Shown here: positions 17,401 through 20,400 of the stretch, piece by piece
How positions within the stretch are numbered: the first letter of the stretch is position 1
How the letters are laid out: each line of letters begins with the position of its first letter
Assembly: GCA_950097015.1 (NCBI GenBank)
Contig: CATNEN010000038.1
Coordinates: forward strand, 2,480,001-2,544,000
Length of the DNA: 64,000 nt
Origin: Macrostomum hystrix
Lineage: Eukaryota > Animalia > Platyhelminthes
Direction of reading: 5' to 3'
Notes under the pieces: generated by a model
Databases searched by the model: none
What the model saw: the letters and a program-made list of their open reading frames with translations, nothing else
What the model was told of the DNA's origin: nothing
Made by a program: the position numbers and the translations under genes

Positions 17401-20400
17401 GCCAATGCAGGTGTTGTGTCAAGCACACTAGCAGAAGGGGACTGCACACCTAATGTAATCCCCAGCTCTCTCGGACACCGGTTGACAGCCGCGTGTCAGC
17501 AATGGAATTTATTTTTCGATACATATCGGCAGCATCCAAACCCCACTGAATTGCCGCACAGAGCTGCATTATTTCACGCCAGCCGGAATTATTATTTCCC
17601 GACGAAATTTCGGTACTCATTTGCAGCTGAGTAGACTGCGAGCACATCAGTCGGTACTCATTTGCAGCTGAGTAGACTGCGAGCACATCAGTCGGTACTC
17701 ATTTGCAACTGAGTAGACTGCGAGCACATCAGTCGGTACTCATTTGCAGCTGAGTAGACTGCGAGCACATCAGTCGGTACTCATTTGCAGCTGAGTAGAC
17801 TGCGAGCACATCAGTCGGTACTCATTTGCAGCTGAGTAGACTGTGTGCACATCAGTCGGTACTCATTTGCAACTGAGTAGACTGTGTGCACATCAGTCGG
17901 TACTCATTTGCAACTGAGTAGACTGCGAGCACATCAGTCGGTAATCATTTGCAGCTGAGTAGACTGCGAGCACATCAGTCGGTACTCATTTGCAGCTGAG
18001 TAGACTGCGAGCACATCAGTCGGTACTCATTTGCAACTGAGTAGACTGCGAGCACATCAGTCGGTACTCATTTGCAGCTGAGTAGACTGCGAGCACATCA
18101 GTCGGTACTCATTTGCAGCTGAGTAGACTGCGAGCACATCAGTCGGTACTCATTTGCAGCTGAGTAGACTGCGAGCACATCAGTCGGTACTCATTTGCAA
18201 CTGAGTAGACTGCGAGCACATCAGTCGGTACTCATTTGCAGCTGAGTAGACTGCGAGCACATCAGTCGGTACTCATTTGCAGCTGAGTAGACTGCGTGCA
18301 CATCAGGGAAAAGCAGCTTGCCAAAGGCTGCACGAATAATTCTAGACTAGGTCGGGAGTCGAACCTAGGACCATCTGATCCAGAGTCCGACACCTTACTG
18401 ACTATCCGCCCTTTTCTTGTGTCGGGTGTCACAAGACAGCCAATCAAAATTAAAAGACAAGAAAGAAAGATATTTACAGTTAGTTAGTGGTCACAACACA
18501 GCGAGACAATTGACAACAATCTAATCACTCCGACAGTCGATCAGAATGACGACTAATTAGAATCTTACTTTGATGTAGCCGCCGCTATCAATAAGCAGGT
18601 TCTCTGGTTTGAGATCGCGATAGATAAGATCTAGGCTGTGCAGATATTCGAAGCCAAGAATAATTTGACTGCCATAGAATCTTGAGTGGGGCTCGCTGTT
18701 TGTTTATTTGTTGTTGGTTAAGATTGGTTTCATTGAGGTTATTTAGTGTGAATGAATCATTTCAAAGCAAAACAATGGCCATGTTACACATTAGTTATTG
18801 ACAAACGGCACTGCATATGTTAAAGTCACACAGTTATGCAAAATCTATATGAAATAGCGATATAATTTGATAAAATATTAAAGACACCGCATTTCTCAAA
18901 TTATTTCATGCTCATCTTTTTCATGGAGAAAGAAAAGAAAGTTATAGTAAAAGTCCGCTACAAAATGTGTTTGTTACAGTCCTCAGAATGTAAGAATTAA
19001 AGAATCCTATAGACTGTCTGTTACGGCCCTAGTCGCCTATAATTTTACCTTGAGAAAGCCGTCACCAGCGATGAGAATGTTTTCAGGCTTTAGATCGCGA
19101 TAGATGAGGTCTAGACTGTGCAAATATTCGAATGCTAGGGTGACCTGGGCGCCGTACAGCCTAGTTACTGGCTCGCTGCAAGTTGTTTATATTTTATAGT
19201 CAAAAAACGTTTTTTGTGACAGTTTCTTTGCTGTCAAACAATAAACTGAACTGAGAATTAAACACTGAGACATTTAGAAATTCAATAATGTACTTTTAGT
19301 TGTAACATGTTAATAGACAGCAAGGCGTCAATAAGTGCACTTTAAATATAACTGTCAAATATGTACTTTTAGGACCTCAAGTCATGTACACTAAAGTATA
19401 ACTAATGTCTTTTGTACTTCTTATGATACCTGATTGACAATATGCACTTTAGGAGTGCCCCGTTAGTGCGTACTTATTTTTGTACTTTAGTGGTGACACG
19501 TTACTTGTACTTTAGTGGTGCTTGGTATTGTGCAATTAGGGTGTTTCCAGTGAGTCACAAAAATGTACTTTATGGGTATTTATGTGTTGTTGCTATGTGC
19601 TTTTGTACTTCTGTCTTAACATTTTTATTGGCAATTAAAAGTAATTTCAAAGCAATTCAGACGTAATATACTCATTTTATAAAGTAAAATAACTATTTAA
19701 AAAAATTTTACACAAGAACCGTATGCAAAAAGTATAAGAGGACAAATATATAGCATTAATAGAGTGACAGACACCACCCCAAAGCTTACCTGAAGCGGCC
19801 GATGCGACGCAGGTGGGAGAACATTTCGCCGCCGTTAACAAACTCCAGCACCATGTACAGGTTGCTGTTGTCCTGTGATTAAAGCGTTTCCGGAATATCA
19901 ATTAGCATCTGTATGAATAGGTATGTTGACTAGCAAGCAAAACCCGCTTTTAAAACTTATCCTAAATCTCCTATAGATAAAGGCACCCCTTGGAGGGCCC
20001 ACCGGTAAAACATGGTCTGTCTGTCTGTCTGTCAGTCTGTCTGTCTGTCTGTCTGCCTGTCTGTCTGTCTGTCTGCCTGTCTGCCTGTCTGTCTGTCTGT
20101 CTGCCTGTCTGCCTGTCTGTCTGTCTGTCTGTCAGTCTGTCTGTCTGTCTGCAACAGCTACAGATCTGCAGGAGTAGTAGGCTGGTCAGTGCAGCCCGGG
20201 ATGGGCTGGGCCATAAGCACCTCAAGCTCGCTAATTAATGAAATAAAAGTACACCGGTTGCGATGCAATTTGCGGCGTCGGGTGATGCGGAAAAAGAAAA
20301 AGCTGGCTCAATTAGAGAATGCTTAGTGGCTTCGCAAGGCATAATTACCTGCATAGTAGGGCAAACATCCCATATTCCCGCAATTTACCCTTTACAATGG

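What the first reader, a model, noticed from the sequence alone, without database searches (positions are those of the whole stretch)
18569..19175. Two tandem 127-bp catalytic-loop exons in PKA-C: mutually exclusive splicing inside the kinase core
Seen: exon A (19049-19175) and exon B (18569-18695) have the same length and phases, intact AG/GT sites and open frames. They share [18 protein letters not shown] with many synonymous differences, but differ at 13 of 42 residues in helix E and beta7-beta8 ([14 protein letters not shown]...[10 protein letters not shown] versus [14 protein letters not shown]...[10 protein letters not shown]). Including both gives a frameshift with a TGA inside B; skipping both gives AG|G TAA, an immediate stop, so exactly one must be used. 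Established: vertebrate PRKACA has a single exon here, while the Aplysia PKA-C gene uses two mutually exclusive cassettes over this same 42-residue segment. Inference: this is either an ancient spiralian cassette pair or a convergent duplication, yielding two kinases with different kinetics or partners from one gene.
Basis: partly seen in the sequence, partly recalled or inferred. Interest (0 to 1): 0.9.

Follow-up and report, generated by a model that had tools for sequence, protein, structure and literature searches.

The report
Alternative kinase-core exons in flatworm PKA
A flatworm (Macrostomum hystrix) gene for the catalytic subunit of protein kinase A carries two old, intact copies of one 127-base exon, only one of which fits into a message, so it can make two versions of the kinase core; this switch is already known from the sea slug Aplysia and is annotated in many related animals, so this is a new case of a known thing.

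Summary
On the minus strand, exons A (19175-19049) and B (18695-18569) are both 127 nt, share phase, have AG/GT sites and open frames, and encode PKA-C residues 140-181. Both together give TGA/TAG inside B. Neither gives an immediate TAA.

The genome statistics match the Macrostomum hystrix assembly, a flatworm and not a mollusc. That genome holds four complete PKA-C paralogs. Each has the same pair: a variant cassette first and a canonical one second. Synonymous sites between paralogs are largely saturated, yet all eight exons are intact, so both types are under purifying selection.

Assembled RNA contigs from two studies splice upstream exon > A > downstream exon. B-splicing was not seen in the few runs available. 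The RNA-seq-derived M. lignano orthologue does carry B.

Annotated isoforms use alternative cassettes at this exon in Lingula, oyster, chiton, octopus, Owenia and a bryozoan. The one Aplysia protein retrieved carries the "V" cassette. There are three cassette classes. The flatworm variant is not the Aplysia "V" class and resembles the "ENILI" class, but 42 columns cannot prove orthology.

The scan already noted the three other paralogs in this genome. Verdict: real, a new member of a known kind.

The parts
19049..19175 (-). Cassette exon A (variant, 'ENILI'/N-like type): PKA-C residues 140-181 (helix E, catalytic loop YRDLKPEN, beta7-beta8), 127 nt
   Evidence: Searches give the sequence. Pfam Pkinase E=5.5e-10. 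It aligns to residues 140-180/181 of PKA C-alpha chains such as 1atp_E. It is spliced 19790>19175, and its 3' end joins the 16913 exon, in contigs of runs X2 and X4.
18569..18695 (-). Cassette exon B (canonical type), 127 nt, same phase as A
   Evidence: Searches give the sequence. Pfam Pkinase E=7.3e-11. It differs at 2 of 42 residues from the cassette of the M. lignano orthologue P0173/P0280. pN between paralogs is 0.04-0.09 against pS 0.53-0.76. In run X4 it is covered only by a 510-nt contig that runs unbroken through the A-B intron.
19790..19872 (-). Constitutive exon upstream of the cassettes ([27 protein letters not shown] + AG), 83 nt
   Evidence: Joined to exon A and to the preceding exon in run contigs.
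16818..16913 (-). Constitutive exon downstream of the cassettes ([32 protein letters not shown]), 96 nt. It starts with GTAA, which gives the TAA stop if both cassettes are skipped.
   Evidence: The loose ends of the X2 and X4 contigs at 19045 are the reverse complement of this exon's start.
21706..21804 (-). Constitutive exon ([33 protein letters not shown]), 99 nt
   Evidence: The loose ends at 19874 in X1 and X4 match its 3' end.
24566..24756 (-). Constitutive exon with the glycine loop and the AMK lysine (..[27 protein letters not shown]), 191 nt
26646..26706 (-). Alternative first coding exon E1a ([20 protein letters not shown] + G)
   Evidence: Identical to the N-terminus of M. lignano P0280.
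27482..27494 (-). Alternative first coding exon E1b (MEDF + T)
   Evidence: Matches the N-terminus MEDFFKNFLEE of M. lignano P0173.
14559..14831 (-). Constitutive exon ([18 protein letters not shown]...TTDWVQ), 273 nt
14275..14415 (-). Last coding exon ([46 protein letters not shown], stop)

Best explanation
The window holds one of four PKA catalytic-subunit genes of Macrostomum hystrix.

The exon that I recall as vertebrate PRKACA exon 6 exists here as two tandem copies. It is 127 nt and covers residues 140-181: the end of helix E, the catalytic loop and beta7-beta8. The spliceosome includes exactly one copy per productive mRNA.

Shown: 127 is not a multiple of 3, so including both copies shifts the frame into TGA/TAG inside B, and including neither gives TAA at once. 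Inferred: such messages would be removed by nonsense-mediated decay, so only single-cassette mRNAs yield kinase.

The product has the same N-lobe, activation segment and C-tail in both forms. The core differs at 13 positions. These include L172I, which is a catalytic-spine residue beside the adenine pocket, the beta7-beta8 turn (D175-G178), and helix-E positions 142-153.

Inferred only: the two cores differ in ATP or substrate kinetics, in stability, or in coupling to regulatory subunits. Combined with the two alternative first exons, they would give up to four isoforms from this gene.

The pair is old. It predates the four paralogs and the M. hystrix / M. lignano split. Both copies are kept by purifying selection, with A evolving about 2-4 times faster at non-synonymous sites.
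For: Anatomy and frame logic.

Identity as PKA-C: the best solved relatives are PKA C-alpha, aligned at residues 140-181. Pfam Pkinase matches both cassettes and the full-length orthologues.

Transcripts: the joint 19790>19175, and A joined to the 16913 exon, appear in contigs of X2 and X4, which come from two studies. No A>B joint was listed.

Four collinear paralogs (C38, C29, C7, C1) each carry variant-then-canonical 127-nt exons with AG/GT sites. Between paralogs pS is 0.53-0.93. pN is 0.03-0.05 for constitutive exons, 0.04-0.09 for B and 0.11-0.23 for A.

M. lignano proteins come from an RNA-seq-based annotation (PMC5730564). The orthologue of this gene carries B (P0173, P0280). Two other paralogs carry A-type cassettes (P0492/P0494 and P0381/P0493). 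A and B each differ at only 2 of 42 residues between the species.

Alternative cassettes over the same 42 residues are annotated as isoforms in Lingula, Ostrea, Liolophura, Octopus, Owenia and Watersipora.

Genome identity: 220,453,370 nt in 42 contigs, with one contig of 13,505,968 nt, matches the M. hystrix assembly table.
Against: No contig joining the upstream exon to B, or B to the downstream exon, was seen for this gene. Only four small runs, all kept as assembled contigs, could be laid, and contigs drop rare forms.

In X4, exon B lies on a contig that runs unbroken from the end of A through the A-B intron. This looks like unspliced or intron-retaining RNA.

Nonsense-mediated decay of double or zero inclusion is assumed, not shown. 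No functional difference between the two cores has been measured here. B use rests on another species' annotation.
Confidence: 0.8

Rival explanations
1. The A/B pair arose by an exon duplication within the macrostomid or flatworm lineage. On this view it only converges on the Aplysia/lophotrochozoan cassettes, and it is not descended from an ancestral cassette array.
For: Holding the Macrostomum A and B cassettes together as one clade costs only 2.25 log-likelihood units (AU p 0.43). In the smaller data set it cost 11.2 units (p 0.096). Exon order is variant first, the opposite of the mollusc fused models, where the variant is second.
Against: A-types share L172I (ENILI), QVVL and L(V)Y with the cassette of cestodes, trematodes, a monogenean, Lingula X2, Owenia and bryozoans. 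In the first tree, A and these N-types sat on one side of a branch, with weak support of 50/83. Read-through ORFs of unknown origin also show N-type first and canonical second (P0002, P0004, P0300). A and B are saturated at synonymous sites.
Confidence: 0.3
2. In this particular paralog only A is used productively. B would then be a rarely used or silent exon kept for another reason, with the four paralogs having divided the two cassettes among themselves.
For: One search shows only A-spliced contigs for this gene. In X4 the A form has depth about 129, while the contig covering B has depth about 11 and is continuous with the intron. In M. lignano each paralog is annotated with a single cassette type.
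Against: The M. lignano orthologue of this very gene is annotated with B from RNA-seq (P0173, P0280, P0281). B keeps its length, frame, AG/GT sites and near-canonical sequence while synonymous sites are saturated. The X4 contig ends exactly at B's donor plus 4 ambiguous bases, and no contig covers the intron beyond it. That fits use of this donor, though the evidence is circumstantial.
Confidence: 0.1
3. The duplicate exon serves mainly as a poison-exon switch. Double inclusion or A-B intron retention would produce nonsense-mediated-decay targets that tune PKA-C dosage, and a second protein isoform would not be the point.
For: Double inclusion creates TGA/TAG. A contig spans the end of A, the intron and B in X4. 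An intron-retaining form after 19790 occurs in X1.
Against: A poison exon needs no conserved protein sequence, yet both cassettes are conserved at the protein level across four paralogs and two species. Both types occur in full-length annotated proteins. No A>B splice joint was seen.
Confidence: 0.07

Closest known systems
Aplysia californica PKA catalytic subunit with alternative internal cassettes
   Same: The same gene family and the same 42-residue segment. The Aplysia protein NP_001191420 (P0475) aligns cassette for cassette. One gene gives two kinase cores. Alternative N-terminal exons are also present.
   Different: The retrieved Aplysia cassette is the V class (..IVLVLEYLHHLDIMY..ENLLID..). 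It forms a supported clade (98/91) that excludes the flatworm A cassettes. In mollusc fused gene models the canonical exon comes first and V second. In Macrostomum the variant comes first. The papers themselves were not held, so kinetics and cassette limits in Aplysia were not re-read.
Annotated isoforms of PKA-C in other Lophotrochozoa (RefSeq for all but Owenia): Lingula anatina X1-X9, Ostrea edulis X1-X3, Liolophura sinensis X4-X6, Octopus bimaculoides X1/X2, Watersipora subatra X1-X4, Owenia fusiformis CAH1775154-6
   Same: The isoforms differ only in the same 42 residues. This is the same exon-6 switch.
   Different: Three classes occur. C is canonical. V is found in molluscs, annelids, a brachiopod and a bryozoan. 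N carries 'PENILID' and is found in Lingula X2, Owenia, Watersipora X3/X4 and Bugula. Lingula has all three. Macrostomum has N-like plus C and no V (one search found only two cassettes per gene).
PKA-C of parasitic flatworms (Schistosoma, Trichobilharzia, Echinococcus, Taenia, Fasciola, Cichlidogyrus)
   Same: Their annotated cassette (E[SC]H[SA]RFYA[SG]QVVLAFEYLH[HY][16 protein letters not shown]..) shares ENILI, QVVL and HHLELVY with the Macrostomum A-types. The closest is the C1 paralog, [42 protein letters not shown].
   Different: Only one cassette is annotated there.
Vertebrate PRKACA/PRKACB
   Same: Exon lengths of 83, 127 and 96 nt around this segment match the vertebrate exons as I recall them. 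PMC3625193 reports that the lengths and intron phases of exons 2-10 are conserved within the family.
   Different: Vertebrates have a single exon here. Their isoform diversity lies in the 5' exons (PMC3625193, PMC5526564).

Membership tests
PKA catalytic subunit (AGC kinase, PRKACA/B-like) | Protein kinase domain with the catalytic loop YRDLKPEN, and closest solved relatives being PKA C-alpha | tested here: met
   Pfam PF00069 matches both cassettes and the orthologues P0280 and P0381. All top PDB matches are PKA C-alpha, aligned at residues 140-181.
PKA catalytic subunit (AGC kinase, PRKACA/B-like) | PKA-type flanks: glycine loop [11 protein letters not shown] + [15 protein letters not shown]-tail FDEYEEE and terminal FxxF (FAEF) | tested here: met
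   All are present in the translated exons of the window gene and of the three paralogs. That these motifs are diagnostic is from my own knowledge.
Mutually exclusive tandem cassette exons | Adjacent homologous exons of equal length and phase with intact splice sites | tested here: met
   127 nt each, with AG/GT sites, in all four paralogs.
Mutually exclusive tandem cassette exons | Joint inclusion or joint skipping destroys the reading frame | tested here: met
   B read after A gives TGA/TAG. Skipping both gives AG|G TAA.
Mutually exclusive tandem cassette exons | Mature transcripts carry exactly one of the two, and each is used | tested here: inconclusive
   A alone is seen in X2 and X4. B alone is seen only in the M. 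lignano orthologue's RNA-seq-derived proteins. No A>B joint was seen, but the data are only four small contig-level runs.
Aplysia/mollusc-type pair (canonical + V cassette) | Variant cassette with the V signature (..VL[VM]LEYLHHLD[IV]MY..ENLL..) | tested here: not met
   Flatworm A lacks the signature. The V clade (98/91) contains only V-signature cassettes and so excludes flatworm A. However, forcing A with V is not rejected (AU p 0.55).
Aplysia/mollusc-type pair (canonical + V cassette) | Order canonical first, variant second | tested here: not met
   The Pinctada, Mytilus, Mya and Biomphalaria fused models have canonical then V. M. hystrix has the variant first in all four genes.
'ENILI' (N) cassette class of Lophotrochozoa | L172I (PENILI) with V150/V163-type helix-E changes, placed upstream of the canonical cassette | tested here: met
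   PENILI is present in all six Macrostomum A-type cassettes. The order N then canonical is seen in M. hystrix and in ORFs P0002, P0004 and P0300. I defined this class after seeing the sequences.
'ENILI' (N) cassette class of Lophotrochozoa | Phylogenetic grouping of Macrostomum A with N cassettes | tested here: inconclusive
   They sat on one side of a branch with support 50/83 in the 50-row tree. The 74-row tree does not resolve it (AU p 0.41). Only 42 columns are available.

The most novel reading that the evidence does not exclude
PKA-C exon 6 was already a multi-cassette array in the lophotrochozoan ancestor, in the order N ('ENILI'), canonical, V. It has been kept for over 500 million years with lineage-specific losses. 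Lingula keeps all three. Annelids and bryozoans show N and V. Molluscs show canonical and V. Macrostomid flatworms keep N (= exon A) and canonical (= exon B) in four paralogs. Parasitic flatworms made N their main or only exon. This would be one of the oldest conserved mutually exclusive exon systems inside a kinase catalytic core, and I found no description of it in the PKA evolution papers I could read.
Probability: 0.4. Interest if true: 0.6.

Novelty: new member of a known kind. Interest (0 to 1): 0.38.

Why it matters
PKA-C is the textbook kinase, and its core is usually treated as invariant, with isoform diversity confined to the N-terminus. Here a free-living flatworm that can be made transgenic and knocked down by RNAi (in its sister species M. 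lignano) swaps helix E, a catalytic-spine residue and the beta7-beta8 turn by splicing, in four genes. That offers a workable system for asking what an alternative kinase core does. It also explains several public gene models that wrongly fuse both cassettes (Pinctada, Mytilus, Mya, Biomphalaria, and the M. lignano entry A0A1I8JS06). Comparative data hint at three ancient cassette classes. The finding itself repeats a principle known since 1988, and the scan has already noted it on three other pieces of this genome.

Tried and rejected
I therefore could not fetch the genomic loci of Lingula, Owenia, Watersipora or Schistosoma, or the unknown contigs behind P0002, P0004, P0005, P0007 and P0300. 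Cassette order outside Macrostomum rests on read-through ORFs and fused gene models.
- The Aplysia and C. elegans primary papers (PMC48508, PMC362957, PMC1220146) are not held. Only the 1988 title was confirmed.
- Reads: one search and one laying were allowed. All four runs are contigs, so there are no junction counts and no tissue information.
- The joined model of this gene was never built or searched.
- Trees of 50 and 74 cassettes support the V clade and the Macrostomum A clade. They cannot place A: AU p is 0.41 with N, 0.55 with V and 0.43 with flatworm B.
- Competing intron pairings of the docking/selector type: short inverted repeats exist, for example 18742-18755 with 19382-19395 and 16938-16956 with 18751-18769. 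They are AT-rich and of a length expected by chance. A crude whole-intron duplex test gave z between -1.3 and +2.2 before timing out. No support, and the test was weak.
- Rejected as evidence for cassettes: the Oppiella, Ostertagia and Ixodes models with several matched stretches (P0001, P0003, P0165). These repeat identical blocks and look like assembly or annotation artefacts.
- The mollusc reading of the window was rejected. The genome statistics match M. hystrix.
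Full report
**1. Observation**

The gene runs on the minus strand. Exon A (19175-19049) and exon B (18695-18569) are each 127 nt. Their contexts are ttgcag|C...AAG|gtaaaa and aaacag|C...AAA|gtaaga.

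After one base that completes a serine codon, each exon encodes 42 residues:
- A: [42 protein letters not shown]
- B: [42 protein letters not shown]

They differ at 13 of 42 residues. Nucleotide identity is 0.67, and 0.85 in the shared central 18 codons.

The upstream exon ends ...RRIGRF + AG at 19790. The downstream exon starts GTAACTGATTTC at 16913. Skipping both cassettes therefore reads AG|G TAA. After A, B is read as ...REPAY**, which is TGA then TAG. I only corrected the outer limits of the flanking exons, to 19872-19790 and 16913-16818.

**2. What the gene is**

Both cassettes match Pfam Pkinase. All the best solved relatives are PKA C-alpha. The cassette aligns with residues 140-181, which cover the end of helix E, the catalytic loop and beta7-beta8.

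The other exons lie in order on the same strand:

| Exon | Coordinates |
|---|---|
| E2 | 24756-24566 |
| E3 | 21804-21706 |
| E4 | 19872-19790 |
| E6 | 16913-16818 |
| E7 | 14831-14559 |
| E8 | 14415-14275 |

There are two alternative first coding exons: 26706-26646 ([20 protein letters not shown]) and 27494-27482 (MEDF). They reproduce the N-termini of two M. lignano proteins, P0280 and P0173.

**3. Whose genome**

The genome search reports the window's assembly as 220,453,370 bases in 42 contigs. One contig is 13,505,968 bases long. These are exactly the total length, contig number and N50 given for the Macrostomum hystrix assembly in PMC10468722, Table 1. The closest public proteins are from M. 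lignano. The animal is a free-living flatworm, not a mollusc.

**4. The pair is present four times**

A six-frame search of the whole genome with exon A found four loci, each with two adjacent hits. I fetched about 30 kb around each. All four are complete, collinear PKA-C genes, on contigs C38 (the window), C29, C7 and C1.

In every one, a variant cassette comes first and a canonical one second. All eight exons are 127 nt with AG and GT sites. The intervening introns are 353-1453 nt, so steric exclusion is not the mechanism.

Divergence between paralogs:

| Exon class | pS | pN |
|---|---|---|
| Constitutive exons (292 codons) | 0.53-0.64 | 0.026-0.048 |
| B-type cassettes | 0.53-0.76 | 0.04-0.09 |
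| A-type cassettes | 0.70-0.93 | 0.11-0.23 |

Exons that had drifted neutrally for that long would not keep their length, frame and splice sites eight times over. Both types are therefore under purifying selection, with A relaxed or diversifying.

A and B of one gene are no closer to each other (0.60-0.67 identity) than to other genes' cassettes, so there has been no recent gene conversion.

**5. Transcripts**

One run search and one laying were allowed. All four runs are assembled contigs.

- In X2 (organism B) a 226-nt contig joins 19790 to 19175. It runs through A and continues into letters that are the reverse complement of the 16913 exon.
- In X4 (organism C, another study) a 209-nt contig (depth about 129) shows the same upstream joint. 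A 54-nt contig shows A joined to the downstream exon.
- No A>B joint was listed.
- Exon B is covered in X4 only by a 510-nt contig (depth about 11). It runs from the last 26 bases of A through the A-B intron and B, and stops at B's donor plus four bases. Those four bases (GTAA) are shared by the intron and the next exon. Nothing covers the intron beyond it.

That stopping point fits use of B's donor, but it is circumstantial. A-only mRNA is therefore shown for this gene, and B-only mRNA is not.

Indirect support for B comes from M. lignano. Its GenBank annotation (BOX15 tags) was built from genome-guided RNA-seq assemblies (PMC5730564).
- The orthologue of this gene (P0173, P0280, P0281) is nearly identical in every exon and has the same two N-termini. 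It carries the B cassette, with 2 of 42 differences.
- Two other paralogs carry A-type cassettes: P0492/P0494, orthologous to C7, also with 2 of 42 differences, and P0381/P0493.
- An older model of the C7 orthologue carries B (P0112).

**6. How it most likely works**

- Shown: two homologous exons, a frame rule that allows only one, and A-only transcripts.
- Inferred: messages with both or neither are removed by nonsense-mediated decay.

The two proteins share everything except 13 core positions, numbered as in 1ATP by the alignment. The changes from B to A are H142V, S143T, F145L, S148A, I150V, I151T, G153A, L172I, D175A, S176G, G177D, Y179F and I180L.

From established PKA structure (my own knowledge), L172-L173-I174 belong to the catalytic spine under the adenine ring, and 175-178 form the beta7-beta8 turn. 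I therefore expect tuning of nucleotide or substrate kinetics, of core stability, or of coupling to regulatory subunits. This is not tested here.

I looked for competing intron pairings that could enforce the choice. I found only short AT-rich inverted repeats and no excess duplex stability. The test was weak, so this stays open.

**7. Comparison with what is known**

The 1988 Aplysia paper exists (title) but could not be read, and neither could the related papers. I therefore tested the comparison on sequences.

A search of 1.8 billion representatives with exon A brought up read-through ORFs and gene models holding two cassettes. Searches with full-length public proteins, scored on the cassette alone, added named proteins, and cluster look-ups added their isoforms.

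Three classes appear:

| Class | Signature | Where found |
|---|---|---|
| C, canonical | ..IVLAFEYLH[SY]LDLIY..ENLLID.. | Widespread (molluscs, Lingula, outgroups) |
| V | ..IVLVLEYLHHLDIMY..ENLLID.. | Aplysia NP_001191420, Lymnaea, Biomphalaria, Haliotis, Octopus X2, bivalves, a chiton, Capitella, Ridgeia, Owenia, Watersipora X2, Lingula X1/X6/X7/X8 |
| N | E[SN]HSRFYASQ[IV]VLAFEYLH.L[DE]L[IV]Y..ENILID.. | Lingula X2, Owenia, Watersipora X3/X4, Bugula, and all cestode, trematode and monogenean proteins retrieved |

Isoforms of one gene that differ only in this segment are annotated in Lingula (all three classes), Ostrea, Liolophura and Octopus (C and V), and Owenia and Watersipora (N and V). 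The switch is thus a known kind, and automated annotation already holds many cases. The PKA evolution papers I could read do not discuss it.

**8. Where exon A belongs**

The Macrostomum A cassettes form a well-supported clade (100/93), and so do the V cassettes (98/91). A is therefore not the Aplysia-type V cassette by signature.

A shares ENILI, QVVL and (L/I)VY with the N class. The C1 paralog's cassette shares the 21-residue run [21 protein letters not shown] with trematodes and a cestode (Echinococcus).

Gene order also fits. It is N-like then canonical in M. hystrix and in three ORFs of unknown origin (P0002, P0004/P0301, P0300). It is canonical then V in the mollusc fused models.

However, 42 columns cannot settle it. 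A with N sat on one side of a branch with weak support in the first tree. In the larger data set, forcing A with N, with V, or with flatworm B is in no case rejected (AU p 0.41, 0.55 and 0.43). I defined the N class after seeing the sequences, which weakens that argument further.

**9. Verdict**

The feature is real, old and selected.

It is a new member of a known kind, namely mutually exclusive catalytic-core cassettes of PKA-C. The twist is that the flatworm's variant cassette is not the Aplysia one.

The scan had already noted the three other paralogs of this genome (s1-382000, s1-848284, s1-840202). One follow-up there reached the same 'known kind' conclusion. I found the paralogs independently, before reading those notes.

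Limits of this work:
- The joined spliced model was deliberately not built or searched.

Noticed in passing
window:5379-7823 (-): A single uninterrupted 815-aa ORF matching Pfam ASC (amiloride-sensitive sodium channel, DEG/ENaC), E=3.6e-62. It lies downstream of the PKA-C gene in a GC-rich stretch (0.52-0.61) and looks like an intronless channel gene.
   Followed up: partly
window:14896-16798, 17610-18306, 20535-21610, 22381-24545: Four long tandem arrays inside PKA-C introns, with periods of 35, 41, 31 and 30 bp and 17-72 copies at 89-97% match. The 30-bp array alone fills about 2.2 kb of the intron after E2 and stays open in two frames for about 700 codons.
   Followed up: no
window:28700-30100 and 31500-37000: Further long tandem repeats upstream of the gene. 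One array translates as repeated VNTAVRHWCVICCYR. A second, of more than 5 kb, translates as DRGEMRQGRDETGER units and has extreme strand asymmetry (GC skew -0.75, AT skew -0.62).
   Followed up: no
window:26646-26706 and 27482-27494 (-): Two alternative first coding exons of the PKA-C gene ([20 protein letters not shown] and MEDF). They match the N-termini of M. lignano P0280 and P0173. Neither has the MGN myristoylation start seen in most PKA-C1 proteins.
   Followed up: partly
G000:C29:6483100-6484082, C7:7201569-7203274, C1:13606724-13607566 (loci L002-L008, L013-L021): Three more complete PKA-C genes with the same variant-then-canonical cassette pair. M. hystrix has a low BUSCO duplication rate (PMC10468722), so this is a genuine four-gene family with dS around 1 or saturated.
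   Followed up: yes
public proteins P0166, P0167, P0168, P0169, P0170/P0298, P0012: Gene models of Pinctada imbricata, Mytilus edulis, M. coruscus, Mya arenaria, Biomphalaria glabrata and M. lignano (A0A1I8JS06) fuse both alternative cassettes into one protein. These are annotation errors caused by the tandem exons.
   Followed up: partly
public proteins P0284, P0191/P0283, P0228/P0282/P0285/P0286 (Lingula anatina): RefSeq isoforms of one Lingula gene carry three different versions of the 42-residue cassette (N, canonical, V). This suggests a three-way mutually exclusive exon cluster.
   Followed up: partly
window:19793-19867, run X4: An 81-nt contig with 7 differences over the upstream exon, at depth 28. 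It is most likely RNA from one of the other three paralogs, whose protein sequence here is identical.
   Followed up: no
public protein P0206 (EukProt 'Siedleckia nematoides'): A complete animal PKA-C with an annelid-like N-terminus and an ENILI...GFLK cassette, filed under an apicomplexan parasite of polychaetes. It is probably host (annelid) contamination of that transcriptome.
   Followed up: no
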